64,000 nucleotides of DNA, taken from sequence record MN794232.1. One strand, given 5' to 3'. Numbering within the stretch: the first letter of the stretch is position 1; each line of letters starts with the position of its first letter. The notes below the pieces were generated by a model, which saw only the letters and a list, made by a program, of their open reading frames with translations, ran no database searches and was not told where the DNA came from. A program made the position numbers and the translations under genes. Below, in pieces: positions 43,914 to 62,125 of the stretch.

Positions 43914-44438
43914 CTATTTGCGCCCTTTACGATTTGCCTTATTTGCTTTTCTTTTTGCTCTACGCAATTCTTTGCGTTTTGCGATTTTGTCTGCACGTCT
44001 AACTGCATCATAATCCGCAGCACACGACGCAGCAAACGCATCAGGCTTGAAAACGGGTTCTTGACCCACGTATCCCAAGATAGTGCCCTTAGCTTCGTTA
44101 TACGCAACGTGTGAACGATGGGATGGATCTGGGTTGATGTCAACGTGAACTTCAAACCCACGAGTACCACACATTGGCTTAACACGCAGAGCAGTTTCAC
44201 CTGCTTTATAGACTTCATTCATCAAACGACTACGAATACCATCTTTACAAGACATGTACGCTGGTTCAGTTTCGATAGATTTGAATACTTGAGCGCCTTT
44301 ACTACCCTCAAGGTGAATGATGATTACAGTAGCGTAACTAATCATATCACTCTTACGCTTGCTATCACACCCAACATAAATCGTACTGTTCGGATGACTG
44401 TTATTGATAGCTGTTTCAATTGCTTCCCAATCGAACAT
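43914..44438 (-). CDS. RNase H-like YkuK (DUF458) family protein
   Basis: IYVGCDS, YATVIIIH, RLMNEV, EVHVDIN, KPDAFAASCAAD. Confidence 0.8.
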   Translation of the reverse strand: MFDWEAIETAINNSHPNSTIYVGCDSKRKSDMISYATVIIIHLEGSKGAQVFKSIETEPAYMSCKDGIRSRLMNEVYKAGETALRVKPMCGTRGFEVHVDINPDPSHRSHVAYNEAKGTILGYVGQEPVFKPDAFAASCAADYDAVRRADKIAKRKELRRAKRKANKANRKGRK

Positions 44439-44489
44439 TTTCACCTCTGTACAAAAAAAGGGCAGCACAATGCCGCCCTTATCACTTAT

Positions 44490-45929
44490 TTAAAAGCTGT
44501 AGCGATCAACGCCTACAGTTTTCAGCATGATCTTGACTGGCTCAAGCTCACCACCTAACAATGAAGTCAGGATAGATGGGCTACAACCCGATACCAGTGC
44601 AGTACCCGCTTCGCCAGCTTTAACCGGAACGTTGCCAAGACGACCACGAATGTTCCAGAAGACTAGTTGTGGCATTTCATAGCCAGCACGTGCGTACATA
44701 GCTTTGATTGCGTCGAAGTTTGCACGTTCGCCGCGACCGTACCAACCACCACCAGTATTTGCTTGGTCGAATTCCATGTCGCTCATGATAAGCAACTTAG
44801 TTGGCATTTCTTCTTGTGAAAGATTTGCACGTTTTGCACGCTCTAACAGAACGTTGAAGCACTTACCGATGTTTGTGCTCATGTCTTCACCTGAGCGATT
44901 CATGTTGTCAAGACGCTCTTTTAGTGAGCTACCGCGCAACTGGTGGAAGTGCGGATCGCTTGAGAACGAAATGAACTGATCTTTGAAGATTCCTTCATTG
45001 CGTTCAGCAACATAGATGCCAAGAGACATTGCAACTTGCTTACAAGTCACGCCAGAACGATCTGTACCTGCGTTGATTGGCGTGCTCATAGAGCCAGATA
45101 CGTCAACAACAGGGATGATGCGCTCATCAGAGCCTTCCATGTAGTTCGGCAGAGCTTTCCATTGCTCGTTCGCTACAGACGCATTGCCATGACTAACGCT
45201 CTTAACGACATCATATGGGAACAATGCACCAGCGTTGATCTTCGCTTCACCTTTTTGAAGTGACTCGATGTAGCTTGTGTAACGAGCAGAAGCGTTACGA
45301 CCGAATGCTTGTTGATAACGAGCAGACGCTACAGATGGCAACTTACCAAAGTCGATTGCATCCCATTCTTGCGCACACATCTTCTGTTCAACAGTGTCAG
45401 ACAAAAGTGCTAGAATCTTACGCCACTGCTTCGCAGTTACACCAAGAGACTTGATTGTGCGCTTGAACACATGACCGTTTTTGCTGTTTTCACGTGGGAA
45501 CCACTTAGCAGCAAGACTATTCTTGTCGTTTACAATCGCGTTTGACCACAATGTGATCGCGTCTTTCTCAAGTCTTGTACCGAACGCAGAAATCAAGTCG
45601 TCGAAACGACCTAGTTCTGGAATTTTCGACATTACAGCACGAGCTACGTCAGGCTGCTCATTACAAAGCTTAGTGAATAGAGTACGGAAAGTACCACGTT
45701 CACCCGCACCACCGCGAACATCACGAGACCACAAAAGAATGCGTGTCGCTAGTTCTGGGTTTTCTGCAAACGCACGACCGAACAGTGTTTTAGACTGATC
45801 GTTGCCACGCATAGCAGCAATACCGAAGAACAAGTTTAGACACTCGTTACCTGAAGTGCTGTGAGTAACTGCACCGTTTGCTGTACGTGAATCGTTTGAT
45901 TGCATAGCGTTCATAAATAGACTAGTCAT
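44490..45929 (-). CDS. TROVE-like DUF2828 / vWA protein (Ro60-related architecture)
   Basis: TANGA...SG..CLNLFF, RDVRGGAGER, AAKWFPR, MIDAS DVSGSM, MSTN, SDMEFD, VFWN; start set by GGAG SD. Confidence 0.8.
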   Translation of the reverse strand: MTSLFMNAMQSNDSRTANGAVTHSTSGNECLNLFFGIAAMRGNDQSKTLFGRAFAENPELATRILLWSRDVRGGAGERGTFRTLFTKLCNEQPDVARAVMSKIPELGRFDDLISAFGTRLEKDAITLWSNAIVNDKNSLAAKWFPRENSKNGHVFKRTIKSLGVTAKQWRKILALLSDTVEQKMCAQEWDAIDFGKLPSVASARYQQAFGRNASARYTSYIESLQKGEAKINAGALFPYDVVKSVSHGNASVANEQWKALPNYMEGSDERIIPVVDVSGSMSTPINAGTDRSGVTCKQVAMSLGIYVAERNEGIFKDQFISFSSDPHFHQLRGSSLKERLDNMNRSGEDMSTNIGKCFNVLLERAKRANLSQEEMPTKLLIMSDMEFDQANTGGGWYGRGERANFDAIKAMYARAGYEMPQLVFWNIRGRLGNVPVKAGEAGTALVSGCSPSILTSLLGGELEPVKIMLKTVGVDRYSF

Positions 45930-45962
45930 TGCTGTAAGCTCCATTATCAAGGATCAAAAAAT

Positions 45963-46565
45963 ATGTTTCACATTGTATATCAAATCACAAACTTAATAAA
46001 CAATAAAATTTACGTCGGTAAACATTCAACAGAGAACATCTACGACGATTACATGGGCTCGGGTAAATTGTTAACCAGAGCCATTTCAAAGTACGGTAAA
46101 GAAAATTTCATCAAAGAGATATTATTCGTTTCACATGATGAGACTGAAGCATATCACAAAGAGTCTGAAATTGTCAACGAAAACTTTGTTTTGCGTCAAG
46201 ACACATACAATTTAAAAATCGGTGGTCTTGGTGGATCATCAGGAATCGAATCACCATGTAAAGGTCGTGCGTTGAGTGAAGATACTAAACGAAAAATGAG
46301 AAAAAGTAAACAATTTTCTCAAAATCATTTAGATTATCTGTCAGATAAGTTAACATCATACAACAAATCTCGCACAGGACAATCAAGAGACGACCTTAAA
46401 GGGTGTTCGAACCCGATGCATAAAGGAATGTGGGTTACACCCGCAGGTAAATTTGAATCGTCCAGCGAAGCTGCATTGGTGAACAATTGCAGTCAATCAA
46501 CTGTAGTTCGACGCTGCAAAAACCCAAATTTCGACGATTGGTTTATCGAAAATTCATCCGAGTGA
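45963..46565 (+). mobile_element. GIY-YIG (Seg-like) homing endonuclease
   Basis: IVYQITNLINNKIYVGKH...YMGSG...YNLKIGG; antisense to neighbours; CATAAATA at 45912. Confidence 0.9.
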
Positions 46566-47897: not shown

Positions 47898-47934
47898 ATA
47901 AATACTCTTGTTATCATCAAACAGGACGGTCTAC

Positions 47935-48480
47935 ATGAACTATTTGAAAATTTATGACAGTATAGTGAAACGAGCACAAAAACGCAAGACAATTTCAGGG
48001 TATTTTGAAAGCCATCACATTTTACCGAGGTGTATGGGAGGCAATAACAAAAAATCAAACATCGTTAGATTGACCGCAAAGGAGCACTACATTTCACACT
48101 TATTGTTAGCTAAGATTCACAACACTCGCGGTTTATGGTTAGCCGTCGCATCAATGAGGGGATGCAATGGCGGAGGTGTGAGATTTACAGGATCTATGTA
48201 CGAAACTGCAAAACGAAAAATTTCCGAAAGTATCCGAGGTGAGAATAACCCGAATTACGGTGGTCTCAGAGAAGAAACAAAACAAAAACTTTCAATCAAA
48301 GCCACTGGCAGAAAACACTCACAAGAGACTAAAGATGCTATGAGCAAAAATCGTCGAGGTGAGAATAACGGCATGTACGGAAAGAAACAACCTACCGAAA
48401 CATGCATTCACTGTGGAAAGATTGCGTCGAAATCAAACATCAAACGCTGGCACAATGATAACTGCAAGTTAAATACATGA
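47935..48480 (+). mobile_element. HNH (Mob-like) homing endonuclease with NUMOD3-like repeats
   Basis: ESHHILPRCMGG...NIVRLTAKEHYISH; exact TATAAATA at 47897-47904; antisense. Confidence 0.9.
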
Positions 48481-54786: not shown

Positions 54787-54861
54787 TGGTGGACACGCAG
54801 GGAGTCGAACCCTATCCTCCTCATTGCAAGTGAGGCGCTTTCCCAATTAAGCTAACGGCCC
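54787..54861 (-). tRNA. tRNA-Ala(TGC), imperfect acceptor stem
   Basis: G3-U70 present; stem pairs only with a bulge. Confidence 0.75.
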
Positions 54862-58206: not shown

Positions 58207-58315
58207 TTAAAATAAAAATGTTTTTGTTTGTATAATAGTACTTATAACACCAAATTTGACGATTTGCGGTATTTTCGCAGAAAATTGAAAAAAAAATCAA
58301 CTTTCTGCGATTTTC

Positions 58316-58561
58316 TTATCGACCTAGGTGTTTTCGCTTGTTCATTTCAACGAGGATTTCATCGTTGTAATGACGGTTCAGTTCAACATACTTCTTGTGC
58401 TGATCTGAAGTCAACTCGTTGGTGTCATTCAGATGTTTCAAGAATCCAAGAGGTTTGCGAAACGACTTGCGATATTCGTTCAGACGCTCGTCCGTTAGAT
58501 TATGCAGTTGTTTCGGAGTCAGTAACGTTTTATTGATGTCAAAACTCATGTTGTACCTCAC
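58316..58561 (-). CDS. hypothetical protein
   Basis: GAGG RBS before MSFD. Confidence 0.6.
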   Translation of the reverse strand: MRYNMSFDINKTLLTPKQLHNLTDERLNEYRKSFRKPLGFLKHLNDTNELTSDQHKKYVELNRHYNDEILVEMNKRKHLGR

Positions 58562-58574
58562 TTGTTATTAAAAT

Positions 58575-58690
58575 TGGTAGTCGGGGCTGGATTCGAACCA
58601 GCGACCACGTGCTTAACAGGCAATTGAAGGAGTGCTGGAGCGATACTTGACAGTATCATTCTTCGTGCTCTACCACTGAGCTACCCGACT
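58575..58690 (-). ncRNA. tRNA-Asn-like RNA A with 41-nt insertion in anticodon stem
   Basis: removing the insert gives a perfect 75-nt tRNA-Asn(GTT) with CCA. Confidence 0.85.
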
Positions 58691-58695
58691 ATGAA

Positions 58696-59217
58696 TTATT
58701 TAACTTTGAACTTCAAATTACGCCAGTCAAAGTTTCGTTTGTTCTTTGTGTTGTAGAACGTGCCCCAATCAATAGCAATCGGACAGTTCTTACTACCTAC
58801 ACGAGCGATAAAGACATCGTGAGTCTCGCTGTAACGCTCTCTAAGCTCTTTTAAACGCTTATCGTAGTTAGCGATATACTCTGCACACGCTTTGTTGTAA
58901 GCTGCTTTAGAGAAGCGTTCGTCACTCGAAAATACATTACCCAGATAAGGTCGAATAACACGAACTCGTTCTTTAGACCAACCCATACTAAAGCTGTTTT
59001 CAATCTCACCTGAGATTTCACCAGTCTTCTTACATCTAGCAAGAATGACCCAGCAACGTTCACGCCGAAAATCTTTTCGTACGTACACGTTAACGTGCTT
59101 GTCAATGTACTCTTGATAACGAGCGTTATACTCAGCACGCAGTTTATTGCGCACTTCAGGCGACATTGCAGCCCGTTCTTCTTTCGAAAACGCTTGTGCG
59201 AATTTCAATGGTTTCAT
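58696..59217 (-). CDS. hypothetical basic protein
   Basis: GAGGA RBS, start MKPL. Confidence 0.65.
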   Translation of the reverse strand: MKPLKFAQAFSKEERAAMSPEVRNKLRAEYNARYQEYIDKHVNVYVRKDFRRERCWVILARCKKTGEISGEIENSFSMGWSKERVRVIRPYLGNVFSSDERFSKAAYNKACAEYIANYDKRLKELRERYSETHDVFIARVGSKNCPIAIDWGTFYNTKNKRNFDWRNLKFKVK

Positions 59218-59230
59218 TATAATTTCCTCT

Positions 59231-59470
59231 TGGCGCCGCTCGTGTGAATCGAACACACGTCAAACACAACACCTCGTCCACCCAATTAGAGTTTCGAAGT
59301 AAGAGCTAATCAGCATTTCGGAGCAGTCGAGCGTTATTTCTACGAGTGAGCTTTCGACAACTCACACGCACTTTCTACCCGGTCCCAGTGATTCGGTACC
59401 AACGCAGGTTGCGAACCTACGTCTGCACTAATGCTGGGAAAACACTGCGTATTGTACACCAGTTAGCGGC
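59231..59470 (-). ncRNA. 240-nt RNA I with tRNA-like ends and CCA
   Basis: GCCGCT/AGCGGC-G-CCA; GTGTG-TTCGATT-CACAC. Confidence 0.75.
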
Positions 59471-59472
59471 AT

Positions 59473-59703
59473 TTAAAGATAGCTATCAAAGACAGCATCA
59501 TCAACTTCTTCAATATTGATGTCAGCGTAACACTCATTCGCAATTGCTTGAATTTCATCTATTGAAACTGTACCTGCGTACAATACAACAGCGTCGTTCG
59601 GAATCACGACATCACACATGTATTTGTTAAACATTGCAGTTCTGAAATCAGAATCAACAGAGTAACCGTGCATTGATGTGATAACTAGCAATTTATGTGA
59701 CAT
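59473..59703 (-). CDS. hypothetical protein
   Basis: GAGGA RBS; upstream TTGACA promoter. Confidence 0.65.
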   Translation of the reverse strand: MSHKLLVITSMHGYSVDSDFRTAMFNKYMCDVVIPNDAVVLYAGTVSIDEIQAIANECYADINIEEVDDAVFDSYL

Positions 59704-59782
59704 AATGTTTTCCTCGTGTAGTTGATAATGTGTATACTACACGTTGATGAAACGCCTGTCAACAACTTTTTCAAATTATTTT

Positions 59783-59859
59783 TGGTAGCCCCTCTCGGAT
59801 TCGAACCGAGAACCTGACGATTATGAGTCGTCTGCTACTACCGTTACAGCTAAGGGGCT
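59783..59859 (-). tRNA. tRNA-Ile2-like (CAT)
   Basis: AGCCCCT acceptor and GACTCATAATCG arm resemble enterobacterial Ile2. Confidence 0.8.
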
Positions 59860-60226
59860 ATCGTTCTAGAAATCTACCGACTTTAGCAGCGAAGATGTTT
59901 GCTTCTTCTGCAATCAAAGCAGTTGATTTCATTTGATGAAAAGCGTCTTGTTGATGCAGAACATCTAGTTTACCAGCGCATTTCATCAGTTCTTTTACTG
60001 ATTGCATAATCTCAATGTTATCAAGCTGACTCGTGTCAGGGTGATGATTGAGACTATCCAAGACAGGGAGTACTTGTTGATAGTAACCCATGCCGATGAA
60101 GTTTATCATAAGTCTGTACTGCATTTCAACAGCAAATGTACAATATTTTCGAAGATTGCGTTTTACAATCTCACAGCGATGTAAGATACAATCAAGTTCG
60201 TCATTTATGTCATCAAACTTATTCAT
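59858..60226 (-). CDS. hypothetical protein
   Basis: GAGG RBS, start MNKFDD. Confidence 0.6.
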   Translation of the reverse strand: MNKFDDINDELDCILHRCEIVKRNLRKYCTFAVEMQYRLMINFIGMGYYQQVLPVLDSLNHHPDTSQLDNIEIMQSVKELMKCAGKLDVLHQQDAFHQMKSTALIAEEANIFAAKVGRFLER

Positions 60227-60240
60227 AAAACCTCGAAAAT

Positions 60241-60360
60241 TGGTGGAGAGTGATGGATTTGAACCACCGACCAAAAGATTTACCAGTTAAGGTTTGCAGC
60301 ATGAATGCTTGTCAGTATTCTTTAACATTCTTTTGCTCTACCAGACTGAGCTAACTCTCC
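60241..60360 (-). ncRNA. tRNA-like RNA B with 50-nt structured anticodon loop
   Basis: canonical acceptor, D and T arms and CCA; AAAGA/TCTTT stem encloses module. Confidence 0.85.
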
Positions 60361-60365
60361 ATTGT

Positions 60366-60476
60366 ATTACTACTTTGTTTCGCTTGTCAGGGCGTCGAAA
60401 CGCTACCTAACCAAGGATTCGAACCTTTTAACCAACACCTCGCGAAAATTATTTTTCTCGTTGGCAAAGTAGTAAT
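60366..60476 (-). ncRNA. second permuted tRNA mimic RNA J
   Basis: 12-bp terminal stem, hairpin, AAGG-TTCGAAT-CCTT T arm, UUCG-capped hairpin. Confidence 0.6.
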
Positions 60477-60487
60477 GTAAAAACATA

Positions 60488-60613
60488 TAGTTGCGGGTGC
60501 AGGATTCGAACCTACATCACGATCTTATGAATGATATGCGAAATTGATTGCCGTACAGATTCTTATCAGAATCAGTTTTGTGCTACGTGTGCTACCACTT
60601 ACACCAACCCGCA
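60488..60613 (-). ncRNA. tRNA-like RNA C with module insertion
   Basis: D and T arms canonical; 15-bp terminal stem 60484-60621; ends ACTA, not CCA. Confidence 0.8.
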
Positions 60614-60882
60614 ACTATATGCTTTCGGGATGCTTACGCAGGTTCTTCTCTACGTAAGCACAGTTCCTCAATGTATATTTTGCCTTAGCCAATCACAACA
60701 CAACCCAACCCAATATCGTGCGCTTTAATTACGGGATTGATGACCCGTTCGCATGTGATTAGCGTAAAAGTATGATTACGCACCTTTTCTTCTTCAATGT
60801 CCAAGGCAAAGAGGACTATGAATACTAGTGCGAGAAGATATACAATCAAATTGCTCACCTCGCTTAATAAGTGAGAGTACAT

Positions 60883-61005
60883 TGGTCGAGTGTAACGGAA
60901 TCGAACCGTTCCCACGATCTCCCTATGATATGCGTAAATTGGTTGCTGAATATAATCATGTCTGATTACAGTATGCTACGTGTGCTGCCACTACACCAAC
61001 ACTCG
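60883..61005 (-). ncRNA. tRNA-like RNA D with module insertion
   Basis: paralog of C; CCA present; 21-bp perfect inverted repeat 60873-60893/60999-61019. Confidence 0.82.
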
Positions 61006-61422: not shown

Positions 61423-61677
61423 TTAAACGGAAATGATAATGCCGCTTTCAGTCTCACCTCGTTCAAGCGCAGCGTGCTTGATCTGAAGTTGTGATACTGC
61501 TTGCTGAAGTTCAATAATAGCTTTGTCATAAAGCTTGTTGTTCTCTTTAAGCAAAGCAATCTGATCGGTCTGCATACCAATGATGTACGTTAGTAGAACA
61601 ACGTTCTCATCAGTCGTCAGCGTTTCAGGCGCTTCATTGTACTTCTTCAGCACCGCTTCGGTAGATAGATCAGTCAT
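61423..61677 (-). CDS. hypothetical coiled-coil protein
   Basis: coupled to 57B. Confidence 0.65.
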   Translation of the reverse strand: MTDLSTEAVLKKYNEAPETLTTDENVVLLTYIIGMQTDQIALLKENNKLYDKAIIELQQAVSQLQIKHAALERGETESGIIISV

Positions 61678-62125
61678 TATTAGCAACCCATTCTAGATCT
61701 AGTGGTTCGATATATTCATCGACAAGGCGAACCTCTGTATTGATGAACATAGGTGTGATTACGTCGTCATAAGATAATGTGACGTGCGGAGTATAGTCAG
61801 GGTAATCGTGAGTACCACCGATAGAGATAAGGTCTTCGTGACGTTCTACAAGAGCAGGACATGACATCTTAGCAACGACCGCGTGTTTACCGTCTTGCGT
61901 TTTCCAACAGTCAACTTGTTCAACAGTGGCAACGAAAGTGGTATCTACAACAGGCACATCAATTTGCTTACGACTATAAAGCACAGTCACGTGAAATTTA
62001 TCTGGATCTAACGGATTTTTTAGACGAAGCGTTTTTTGCAAGCGAACTAGCTCTTGCTTACTTGCTTCGTCTAATTTGATACCAACGTAAGTTCCCTGAC
62101 TCTCAAGGAACTTAGATAGTTTCAT
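61670..62125 (-). CDS. 57B: gp57B / Acb1-like 2H phosphoesterase
   Basis: two HxT motifs (HVTVLYS, HVTLSY); synteny with 57A and 1. Confidence 0.88.
   Translation of the reverse strand: MKLSKFLESQGTYVGIKLDEASKQELVRLQKTLRLKNPLDPDKFHVTVLYSRKQIDVPVVDTTFVATVEQVDCWKTQDGKHAVVAKMSCPALVERHEDLISIGGTHDYPDYTPHVTLSYDDVITPMFINTEVRLVDEYIEPLDLEWVANND

What the first reader, a model, noticed from the sequence alone, without database searches (positions are those of the whole stretch)
60241..60360. RNA B: tRNA body whose anticodon loop is replaced by a 50-nt module
Seen: canonical GGAGAGT acceptor, D arm, T arm and CCA. AAAGA/TCTTT encloses GTTAA-A-[GAATACT-GACA-AGCATTC]-ATGCTGCAAACC-TTAAC-TGGTAAA. There is no 7-nt anticodon hairpin, so it cannot decode, yet it keeps all elbow and CCA features. 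This is the unpermuted counterpart of F.
Basis: seen in the sequence. Interest (0 to 1): 0.72.

Follow-up and report, generated by a model that had tools for sequence, protein, structure and literature searches.

The report
tRNA-shaped partner RNA of phage Ro60
This is a real, conserved phage gene for a tRNA-shaped RNA whose anticodon loop is replaced by a small RNA motif that elsewhere sits right next to phage genes for a Ro60-like RNA-binding protein. It is therefore most likely a non-decoding "Y-RNA-like" partner of that protein, not a broken tRNA.

Summary
Window 60241-60360 (minus strand) scores 55.8 bits against Rfam tRNA, with a 45-nt insertion in the anticodon loop. The acceptor, D and T arms are intact and CCA is encoded.

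The window is Vibrio phage VH1_2019, a KVP40-like phage. GenBank records call this gene "tRNA-Pseudo-4" or "tRNA-Asn".

The insert is a conserved module: a 6-7 bp hairpin with a CU-GNNA-AG top, followed by a U-N-C-N-G-C-A-A tail.
- All 7 hairpin pairs show compensatory changes across 30 distinct copies.
- The window holds four copies, all inside long tRNA-like genes.
- Other copies occur in Vibrio, Cronobacter, Synechococcus and uncultured (IMG/VR) phages, including an Aeh1-sized contig.

The same motif also exists in an open, uncapped form as small RNAs beside DUF2828+vWA genes. It was found in 50 of 80 IMG/VR loci, a 12-fold enrichment (P about 3e-45).

The window's copy of that protein (44490-45929) is predicted to fold like Ro60/TROVE.

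Best reading: a tRNA-bodied Y-RNA analogue bound by a phage Ro60-like protein. No binding or expression data exist. Splicing to a decoding tRNA is not excluded.

Verdict: a new variant of a known kind.

The parts
60241..60360 (-). RNA B: 120-nt tRNA-shaped gene (117 nt plus encoded CCA). This is the finding.
   Evidence: Rfam tRNA 55.8 bits with a 45-nt anticodon-loop insertion. Orthologues occur in 50+ Vibrio phages and in Cronobacter phage S13.
60303..60320 (-). P3 hairpin of the module (GAAUACU-GACA-AGCAUUC, one A.C mismatch). Its top is CU-GNNA-AG.
   Evidence: Alignment A3 of 30 distinct copies: 96% of cells paired, 7/7 pairs with changes on both sides, covariation score 0.74 against 0.19 shuffled.
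60294..60301 (-). Single-stranded tail UGCUGCAA, the conserved U-N-C-N-G-C-A-A motif.
   Evidence: T27, C29, G31 and C32 are invariant and A33 is at least 90% conserved in A3. The same motif is enriched next to Ro60-like genes.
60290..60327 (-). Whole module as matched by covariance model R1.
   Evidence: R1 match of 37.9 bits, E=7.5e-5. It is one of exactly four matches in the 64-kb window.
60321..60328 (-). 5' linker AUGUUAAA, a relic Asn-type anticodon-loop sequence.
   Evidence: Read from the sequence. Mostly conserved in Vibrio orthologues but ACGUUGAC in K566 and GUAGAAAA in S13.
60282..60293 (-). Small distal hairpin ACC-UUAACU-GGU in the 3' linker.
   Evidence: The hairpin persists with different sequences in the six Vibrio orthologues; in S13 only a weak 3-bp candidate exists. 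With seven sequences the evidence is weak.
60274..60278 (-). 3' strand (UCUUU) of the anticodon stem. The 5' strand AAAGA is at 60329-60333.
   Evidence: Invariant in the seven orthologues, apart from G.U in S13.
58575..58690 (-). Paralogue A: a tRNA-Asn(GUU)-like body with the module inserted between positions 28 and 29 of the anticodon stem.
   Evidence: Rfam tRNA 49.8 bits; R1 37.1 bits; architecture read from the sequences.
60490..60613 (-). Paralogue C: a module-bearing tRNA-like gene with an 8-nt anticodon-like loop and no encoded CCA.
   Evidence: R1 44.6 bits; ARAGORN with introns allowed.
60883..61005 (-). Paralogue D: a module-bearing tRNA-like gene with loop AUAGGGA.
   Evidence: R1 40.6 bits; ARAGORN with introns allowed.
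44490..45929 (-). Gene for a 479-aa Ro60-like protein (DUF2828 + DUF7788/vWA), the proposed protein partner.
   Evidence: Pfam E=7.8e-30 and 1.2e-45. AlphaFold2 model with pLDDT 82.5. The top 12 Foldseek PDB hits are all Ro60/TROVE structures, E 1e-9 to 8e-7, TM about 0.5-0.6.

Best explanation
RNA B is a non-decoding, tRNA-shaped small RNA. It belongs to a family in which a phage tRNA body carries, in its anticodon arm, the recognition motif of a phage Ro60-like protein.

Proposed mechanism:
1. It is transcribed on the minus strand with the tRNA cluster (inferred).
2. Its ends are matured like a tRNA's, since the acceptor stem, elbow nucleotides and CCA are all present (inferred).
3. Its anticodon arm ends in a three-way junction. 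This junction displays the P3 hairpin (top G.A / U-A / C-G) and the single-stranded tail U-N-C-N-G-C-A-A (shown by covariation and conservation).
4. The Ro60-like protein encoded at 44490-45929 binds this module (inferred from gene-RNA adjacency in other phages).
5. The tRNA body then plays the role that the tRNA-like domain plays in bacterial YrlA Y RNAs. It serves as a stable handle that tethers or gates the Ro60 ring towards other RNA machinery, for example host PNPase or tRNA-binding enzymes (inferred by analogy).

Compared with classical Y RNAs the topology is circularly permuted. Here the Ro-binding helix is capped by a GNNA loop, and the free ends lie in the acceptor stem.
For: 1. The fold is real. 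Rfam tRNA scores 55.8 bits. Seven orthologues show compensatory changes in the acceptor (U-A to A-U at pair 7) and T stems.

2. The module is real. There are 30 distinct copies, 7/7 P3 pairs have double changes, and the loop G and A and the tail U/C/G/C are invariant.

3. The module is rare. The window holds exactly four copies, all in long tRNA-like genes. The T4 tRNA region has none.

4. Module-bearing tRNA-like genes lie near the DUF2828-vWA gene on the same strand:
- Cronobacter phage S13: about 0.5 kb.
- Synechococcus phage BUCT-ZZ01: about 0.2 kb.
- Aeh1-sized contig L051: 2.7 kb.
- L077: 0.7 kb.
- L108 and L157: within the fetched flank.

5. The open form of the motif, 5'-A|AGGNNNN-UNCNGCAA-(26-40 nt)-NNNNCCU|G, lies on the gene's strand within -600 to +800 nt.
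- It occurs in 50/80 loci: 64 hits against 5.4 expected, P about 3e-45.
- After removing near-duplicates it occurs in 39/66 loci, with 30 different helix sequences.
- The bare motif is 4.9-fold enriched, P about 1e-44.
- The terminal U-A and C-G pairs and the flanking A and G match the capped P3 top exactly.

6. The protein is Ro60-like by fold.

7. Precedents exist. Phage phiLo Ro60 binds phage-encoded Y-like RNAs and host PNPase (PMC12135203). Bacterial YrlA couples a Ro-binding site to a tRNA-like domain, is encoded within 4 kb of the Ro60 gene on the same strand, and one YrlA is cut by RNase P and receives CCA (PMC4201824).

8. Evidence against decoding:
- B has no 7-nt loop.
- The GUU triplet is not conserved in S13.
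- U33 becomes C in K566 and D479.
- Paralogues C and D have an 8-nt loop or an AGG 'anticodon'.
- The phage already has standard tRNA-Asn and tRNA-Tyr.
Against: - There is no binding, expression or processing data for any of these RNAs.
- In this window the Ro60-like gene is about 14.3 kb from B, with the tRNA cluster in between. The link therefore rests on other phages.
- The motif is not the known Ro60 site (GGUCCGA, GNCGAAN0-1G or CGAA). Rfam's Y-RNA-type families, which I assume are in the library, gave no match.
- Paralogues A, C and D, and many relatives, keep tRNA-like anticodon hairpins with U33 and A37. Removing their insert would give a perfect cloverleaf, which is what an intron would look like.
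- 27 of 66 non-redundant Ro60-like loci showed no motif with my simple pattern.
- Copies in the P3 alignment were picked with a filter demanding at least 5/6 pairs, so the percentage paired is inflated. The diversity of pair types is not affected.
Confidence: 0.55

Rival explanations
1. B is an intron-containing tRNA. The 43-45 nt module is cut out by a protein machinery: an unknown endonuclease, plus a phage or host RNA ligase. The RNase H-like protein that co-occurs with the tRNA-embedded form is a candidate endonuclease. The product would be a decoding tRNA with loop AUGUUAA (Asn) or AUGUAAA (Tyr). The Ro60-like protein could act as chaperone or specificity factor.
For: - The 7 nt after the anticodon stem read AUGUUAA, so excision at 37/38 or 38/39 restores a canonical loop.
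- In paralogue A and its relatives in ZZ01, D479, L051 and L077, removing the insert gives a (near-)perfect 5-bp anticodon stem with a 7-nt loop, and the stem covaries (UGC/GCA to AGC/GCU).
- tRNAscan-based annotations call B tRNA-Asn.
- A PF04308 RNase H-like gene sits next to the Ro60-like gene here. It is found near Ro60-like genes in loci with tRNA-embedded modules (window, L048/S13, L077, L108). In the 80-locus set it is in 2 of 3 such loci and in none of the other 77.
Against: - No bulge-helix-bulge motif can be drawn at the junctions (by inspection).
- The insert is far too small for a group I intron, and Rfam finds none.
- The would-be anticodon is not conserved: S13 has GUAGAAA, and K566 has C at position 33.
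- The same module exists as free-standing small RNAs with no tRNA exons. It therefore has a function of its own.
- The phage already encodes tRNA-Asn(GUU) and tRNA-Tyr(GUA). B has a short variable loop, unlike bacterial tRNA-Tyr, and A73 rather than the G73 of the phage's tRNA-Asn.
Confidence: 0.2
2. B is a functional tRNA mimic, but the module's partner is not the Ro60-like protein. It could be a decoy or sponge for a host tRNA-targeting defence nuclease or a tRNA-modifying enzyme. It could also be a stable RNA with another ligand. On this view the proximity of the motif to Ro60-like genes reflects co-regulation only.
For: - In this phage the RNAs sit in the tRNA cluster, 12.6-15 kb from the Ro60-like gene.
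- The motif differs from every described Ro60 site (PMC4201824, PMC12135203).
- The Asn-type loop sequences (QUN family) recur in types A and B.
Against: The positional link to the Ro60-like gene is very strong and strand-specific across 30 different helix variants. This is the same criterion that identified bona fide Y RNAs (PMC4201824). No other conserved neighbour was seen.
Confidence: 0.2
3. B is a dead tRNA gene. On this view it is a pseudogene disrupted by the insertion of a small repeat and has no function, as the KVP40 annotation 'tRNA-Pseudo-4' implies.
For: It is annotated as a pseudogene in KVP40. It has no anticodon loop.
Against: - It is conserved at 72% identity between Vibrio and Cronobacter phages whose flanks do not align.
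- Compensatory changes occur in the T, acceptor and P3 stems.
- Four to five paralogues are maintained per genome across a whole genus.
- Relatives are present in many uncultured phages.
Confidence: 0.05

Closest known systems
Bacterial YrlA Y RNAs (Chen et al. 2014, PMC4201824)
   Same: Both are modular RNAs that join a Ro60-recognition element to a tRNA-like domain with T arm, D arm and acceptor-type stem. YrlA is encoded near a Ro60 gene on the same strand. The M. smegmatis YrlA is even cut by RNase P and receives CCA.
   Different: - In YrlA the 5' and 3' ends form the Ro-binding stem and the acceptor stem is closed. In B the acceptor stem is open with CCA and the putative Ro-binding helix is capped.
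- The motif is U-N-C-N-G-C-A-A after a helix, not GNCGAAN0-1G.
- The protein belongs to the DUF2828-vWA branch.
- No Rfam family other than tRNA reached E<=0.1 on B.
Thermus phage phiLo Ro60 with Yrl1/Yrl2 (PMC12135203; PDB 9KOP, 9L5Y)
   Same: A phage-encoded Ro60 homologue with phage-encoded partner RNAs next to its gene. It recruits host PNPase. It is the best structural match to the window's protein.
   Different: Yrl1/2 are stem-bulge-stem RNAs with a CGAA motif and no tRNA body. They lie upstream of the gene. Sequence identity of the proteins is about 16%.
Intron-containing tRNAs (archaeal/eukaryal BHB introns; bacterial and phage group I introns in tRNA)
   Same: A tRNA gene interrupted in the anticodon arm. 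The positions 37/38 (B) and 28/29 or 29/30 (paralogues) are also used by archaeal introns.
   Different: There is no BHB motif and no group I core. The insert is a conserved motif that also exists outside tRNAs. No splicing endonuclease was identified.
T4 stable RNAs C and D (species 1 and 2)
   Same: Small stable RNAs of unknown function encoded in a T4-type phage tRNA cluster. RNA C has a T-arm-like hairpin.
   Different: They show no sequence or motif similarity, and R1 finds nothing in the T4 tRNA region. T4 does not appear in the 60 rows shown (of 711 records) with the DUF2828 protein.

Membership tests
Y RNA / YrlA-type Ro60 partner RNA | Encoded close to (within about 4 kb) and on the same strand as a Ro60 gene | tested here: inconclusive
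   Met for relatives of B in S13, ZZ01, L051, L077, L108 and L157. In this window B is on the same strand but about 14.3 kb from the Ro60-like gene.
Y RNA / YrlA-type Ro60 partner RNA | Known Ro60 recognition sequence (GGUCCGA bulged helix, GNCGAAN0-1G or CGAA) | tested here: not met
   B contains no CGAA. The conserved motif is a helix plus U-N-C-N-G-C-A-A.
Y RNA / YrlA-type Ro60 partner RNA | tRNA-like domain with T arm, D arm and acceptor-type stem | tested here: met
   Rfam tRNA 55.8 bits over the full model.
Y RNA / YrlA-type Ro60 partner RNA | 5' and 3' ends pair to form the Ro-binding stem | tested here: not met
   The ends are in the acceptor stem and the candidate Ro-binding helix is capped by GACA. 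The open-ended version exists in other phages.
Y RNA / YrlA-type Ro60 partner RNA | Physically bound by the Ro60 protein | not testable with these tools
   Needs EMSA or co-immunoprecipitation.
Y RNA / YrlA-type Ro60 partner RNA | Match to the curated Rfam models | tested here: not met
   Only tRNA and two weak plastid-UTR chance matches at E<=1 in 58300-61000. Nothing matched on the open-form RNAs either.
Decoding tRNA | Cloverleaf with acceptor, D and T arms and a CCA end | tested here: met
Decoding tRNA | 5-bp anticodon stem closed by a 7-nt loop with U33 and an anticodon | tested here: not met
   The 5-bp stem encloses 50 nt. Default ARAGORN does not call the gene.
tRNA with a BHB (archaeal/eukaryal type) intron | Two 3-nt bulges separated by a 4-bp helix at the splice sites | tested here: not met
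   By inspection of the junctions, the 5' side has 2 unpaired nt and the 3' side 7. No formal BHB scanner was run.
tRNA with a BHB (archaeal/eukaryal type) intron | A splicing endonuclease (EndA family) available in phage or host | not tested
   Only 64 kb of the 246-kb genome was examined. None was seen among the proteins scanned.
tRNA with a group I intron | Intron of 200 nt or more with the P1-P9 catalytic core | tested here: not met
   The insert is 43-50 nt and Rfam gives no group I match.
tmRNA | tRNA-like ends plus an internal tag reading frame | tested here: not met
   ARAGORN finds no tmRNA. There is no Rfam tmRNA match on B.
Ro60/TROVE protein (for the partner at 44490-45929) | HEAT-repeat ring followed by a vWA domain | tested here: met
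   AlphaFold2 model with pLDDT 82.5. Full-length Foldseek matches to Xenopus, human, Deinococcus and phage phiLo Ro60, E 1e-9 to 8e-7. There is no sequence-level match to PDB Ro60.

The most novel reading that the evidence does not exclude
The tRNA-embedded modules define a new class of chimeric RNAs. In this class a phage Ro60-like ring is loaded onto otherwise genuine tRNAs, several of which keep real anticodon hairpins. This could happen in two ways:
(a) The complex delivers or hides these tRNAs from host tRNA-targeting defences or from the ribosome.
(b) Together with the co-occurring RNase H-like protein, it excises the module. That would be a protein-dependent tRNA splicing or activation pathway not known in bacteria or phages.
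Probability: 0.15. Interest if true: 0.9.

Novelty: new variant of a known kind. Interest (0 to 1): 0.7.

Why it matters
Ro60 and its Y RNAs are a conserved RNA-surveillance system, and in bacteria its RNA partners mimic tRNA. Partner RNAs have been described for canonical Ro60 proteins, including one phage protein.

This analysis adds three things:
- **A candidate partner motif.** It gives a recognisable RNA motif for the DUF2828-vWA branch of Ro60-like proteins. That branch is present in at least 711 sequenced phage genomes.
- **Two topologies of one motif.** The motif occurs either as free small RNAs or grafted into the anticodon arm of complete tRNAs.
- **Re-reading of odd annotations.** It offers a functional reading of genes that have been labelled 'tRNA pseudogenes' or mis-assigned tRNAs in KVP40-type vibriophages since the KVP40 GenBank record.

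It also yields a simple, testable RNA-protein pair for asking what phage Ro60 systems do during infection.

Tried and rejected
- **Known RNA families.** Rfam at curated and permissive thresholds gave only tRNA.
- **T4 RNAs C and D as homologues.** There is no similarity and no module match.
- **Ro60 by sequence.** A profile search of PDB sequences gave only spurious armadillo-repeat matches. The relationship appeared only by fold.
- **Strict closed-form pattern near DUF2828 genes.** It hit only 2 of 80 loci, which at first argued against the link. The covariance model and reading of its weak hits then revealed the open form.
- **First structure-prediction job.** It was redone without them.
- **Papers not held.** The KVP40 genome paper and the 2020 Ro60 review were not in the library. 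The supplementary tables of Chen et al. 2014 were not held either.
- **Literature searches.** Searches for KVP40 tRNA introns, small-RNA data, DUF2828 and Ro-like proteins found nothing on these RNAs.
- **Sigma-70-like promoter abutting B.** The site at 60390-60361 ends at the first base of the RNA and overlaps region F. I treat it as chance.
- **Thermodynamic folding of the insert alone.** It gave inconsistent structures between orthologues and was not used.

Full report
**Where the window comes from**

The window is 100% identical to Vibrio phage VH1_2019 (MN794232), a KVP40-type T4-like phage of the genus Schizotequatrovirus. Its minus strand carries a large tRNA cluster. ARAGORN finds 27 tRNAs between 52150 and 59859.

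**Checking the observation**

The finding lies just upstream of that cluster. Read on the minus strand, 60360-60241 gives these parts:
- a 7-nt acceptor strand GGAGAGU;
- a standard D arm with the GG elbow nucleotides;
- a 5-bp stem AAAGA/UCUUU;
- a UGGUC variable loop;
- a T arm with UUCAAAU;
- the complementary acceptor strand, A73 and an encoded CCA.

Rfam's tRNA model covers it end to end at 55.8 bits (E=2.5e-9). It has to skip 45 nt in the anticodon loop. Default ARAGORN does not call it.

Two details need adjusting:
- The module hairpin has an A.C mismatch.
That hairpin survives with different sequences in the six Vibrio orthologues, while S13 shows only a weak candidate. With seven sequences neither option is settled.

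**How the gene is annotated elsewhere**

- KVP40 calls it tRNA-Pseudo-4.
- phi-pp2, phi-ST2 and 1.081.O call it tRNA-Asn.
- The papers I could read only count such genes as pseudo-forms.

**The insert is a conserved module**

The window has three more long tRNA-like genes: 58575-58690, 60490-60613 and 60883-61005. Their tRNA bodies differ, but their inserts share a core.

I collected copies from Vibrio phages, Cronobacter phage S13, Synechococcus phage BUCT-ZZ01 and two IMG/VR contigs. This gave 30 distinct 38-nt modules that align without gaps. The core has two parts:
- a 6-7 bp hairpin whose top is nearly fixed (C-U, then G-N-N-A, then A-G);
- a tail with an invariant U, C, G, C and a nearly invariant A, written U-N-C-N-G-C-A.

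The hairpin statistics are strong:
- All seven pairs show changes on both sides.
- 96% of cells pair, against 35-47% when the partner is slid by 1-3 columns.
- The covariation score is 0.74, against 0.19 for shuffles.

One caveat applies. The copies were gathered with a filter requiring at least five of six pairs. The percentage paired is therefore inflated, but the variety of pair types is not.

A covariance model of the module (R1) finds exactly four copies in the 64-kb window. All are inside the long tRNA-like genes. It finds none in the T4 tRNA region.

**Two architectures**

In paralogues A, C and D, and in many relatives, the module sits in the 5' strand of the anticodon stem, between positions 28 and 29 or 29 and 30. 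A short anticodon-like hairpin remains, with loops such as CUGUUAA, AUCAUAA and AUUCCAA.

In B and its orthologues the 5-bp stem is intact and no clean 7-nt loop remains. The first 7 nt after the stem, AUGUUAA, look like a relic Asn loop. That sequence is not kept in S13 (GUAGAAA), and K566 has C at position 33.

**The link to a Ro60-like protein**

In S13 and BUCT-ZZ01 the long tRNA-like genes lie a few hundred bases from a 467-aa gene with Pfam domains DUF2828 and DUF7788/vWA. The window encodes a 49%-identical homologue at 44490-45929 on the same strand. At least 711 phage records have one, and some are annotated 'Ro-like RNA-binding protein'.

An AlphaFold2 model built from 33 homologues (pLDDT 82.5) has Ro60/TROVE structures as its twelve best PDB matches. 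These come from Xenopus, human, Deinococcus and Thermus phage phiLo, cover the full length, and have E-values of 1e-9 to 8e-7. Sequence profiles alone did not show this relationship.

**The same motif beside the gene in other phages**

I fetched 80 IMG/VR loci centred on this gene. The closed module appears near the gene in three of them. Weak model hits just downstream of the gene led to a second form. This form is a small RNA without a tRNA body. A helix strand is followed directly by U-N-C-N-G-C-A-A, then 26-40 nt, then the complementary strand.

The positional evidence is as follows:
- This open form lies on the gene's strand within -600 to +800 nt in 50 of 80 loci.
- That is 64 occurrences against 5.4 expected from the rest of the same loci, P about 3e-45.
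- Many copies start 32-40 nt after the stop codon.
- After removing near-identical loci it is present in 39 of 66, with 30 different helix sequences.
- The bare 8-nt motif is 4.9-fold enriched, P about 1e-44.

In the largest class the helix begins A-G, preceded by A, and ends C-U, followed by G. That is exactly the top of P3 in the tRNA-embedded module, where the flanking G and A are joined by two nucleotides into the GNNA loop. The module in B is therefore a capped, circularly permuted version of a small-RNA motif that accompanies phage Ro60-like genes. No Rfam family matches either form.

**How widespread the tRNA-embedded form is**

Among the 80 loci returned, 11 are true tRNA-embedded modules from varied contigs. 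Two of these have the Ro60-like gene within the fetched flank. Two more come from contigs already known to carry it. None of the 69 chance matches has it.

**What is known**

Bacterial YrlA Y RNAs join a Ro60-binding site to a tRNA-like domain. They are encoded within 4 kb of the Ro60 gene on the same strand. In M. smegmatis the YrlA is cut by RNase P and receives CCA (PMC4201824). Thermus phage phiLo Ro60 binds two phage-encoded Y-like RNAs and assembles with host PNPase (PMC12135203).

B resembles these in logic but differs in three respects:
- topology, with free ends in the acceptor stem;
- motif, which is not GNCGAA or CGAA;
- protein branch.

I therefore do not file it as a YrlA member. 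I regard it as a new variant of that kind.

**Mechanism and its status**

Shown:
- the tRNA fold;
- the conserved module;
- the module's identity with the gene-adjacent motif;
- the Ro60-like fold of the protein.

Inferred:
- expression and tRNA-like end maturation;
- binding of the module by the Ro60-like protein;
- use of the tRNA body as handle or gate.

**The main rival: splicing**

Removing the insert from paralogue A gives a perfect tRNA-Asn cloverleaf, and B could regain AUGUUAA or AUGUAAA. Several points argue against splicing:
- There is no BHB motif and no group I core.
- B's would-be anticodon is not conserved.
- Paralogues C and D have an 8-nt loop or an AGG triplet.
- U33 is lost in some relatives.
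- The phage already has tRNA-Asn and tRNA-Tyr.
- The module exists on its own without exons.

One point keeps the question open. A PF04308 RNase H-like gene sits directly downstream of the Ro60-like gene here. It is found near Ro60-like genes in loci with tRNA-embedded modules (L048/S13, L077, L108). In the 80-locus set it is in 2 of 3 such loci and in none of the other 77. It could be a processing enzyme.

**Region F**

KVP40 and nt-1 carry an unrelated sequence in that slot. It includes a fifth module-bearing tRNA-like gene, annotated tRNA-Pseudo-5.

**Verdict**

The feature is real, conserved and mis-annotated. It is most likely a tRNA-bodied partner RNA of a phage Ro60-like protein (confidence about 0.55). 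Splicing and other-partner readings remain open. I rate the interest as high for RNA biology and phage-host conflict, pending one Northern blot and one binding assay.

Noticed in passing
window 43914-44468 (-): A PF04308 'RNase H-like' (DUF458) gene lies directly downstream of the Ro60-like gene. Homologues were found near Ro60-like genes only in loci that carry tRNA-embedded modules (L048/S13, L077, L108). In the 80-locus set that is 2 of 3 such loci and none of the other 77. It may be a processing enzyme.
   Followed up: partly
window 45930-45938 (-): The motif UUACAGCAA sits between the Shine-Dalgarno GGAG and the AUG of the Ro60-like gene itself. The gene has no adjacent small RNA here. 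This could be an autoregulatory site or chance (about 0.5% for a 20-nt stretch).
   Followed up: no
window 60361-60489 (-): Region 'F' has a 12-bp terminal stem, a T-arm-like hairpin AAGG-UUCGAAU-CCUU, a UUCG-capped hairpin and a degenerate CUGACAAG. It gets no R1 match. KVP40, phi-pp2 and nt-1 carry an unrelated sequence plus a fifth module-bearing tRNA-like gene in the same slot.
   Followed up: partly
window 58575-58690, 60490-60613, 60883-61005 (-): Three paralogous long tRNA-like genes have the module inserted at position 28/29 of the anticodon stem and keep anticodon-like hairpins: CUGUUAA, the 8-nt AUUCAUAA, and AUAGGGA. The VH1_2019 record does not annotate them.
   Followed up: yes
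window 54790-54861 (-): Rfam calls a 72-nt tRNA here (45.7 bits) that default ARAGORN and the GenBank record miss.
   Followed up: no
window 61670-62125 (-): The T4 gp57B homologue matches Pfam Acb1 (anti-CBASS 2H phosphoesterase) at E=1.7e-46. It lies just upstream of the long tRNA-like genes.
   Followed up: no
window 45963-46565 (+) and 47908-48480 (+): GIY-YIG (SegE-like) and HNH/NUMOD3 homing-endonuclease genes flank the Ro60-like gene region.
   Followed up: no
L037, L040, L043, L047 (about 2-4 kb downstream of the Ro60-like gene): Several tandem tRNA-like genes share the same acceptor, D and T arms (AGUCCUGUGGCGGAA...ACAGGUUCGAAUCCUGUCAGGACUAC). Their long middle parts (30-70 nt) are completely different from one another. 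They may be another family of tRNA-bodied RNAs linked to phage Ro60-like genes.
   Followed up: no
L003, L006, L010 (B orthologues) and L005 3882-3994: Several family members have a T stem with a bulged U (GCG-U-GG / CC-CGC) instead of a regular 5-bp stem.
   Followed up: no
L159, L143, L157 (IMG/VR): These are minimal versions in which the module replaces the whole anticodon arm (L159). In L143 and L157 the D arm is missing as well, leaving only the acceptor stem, T arm and CCA.
   Followed up: no
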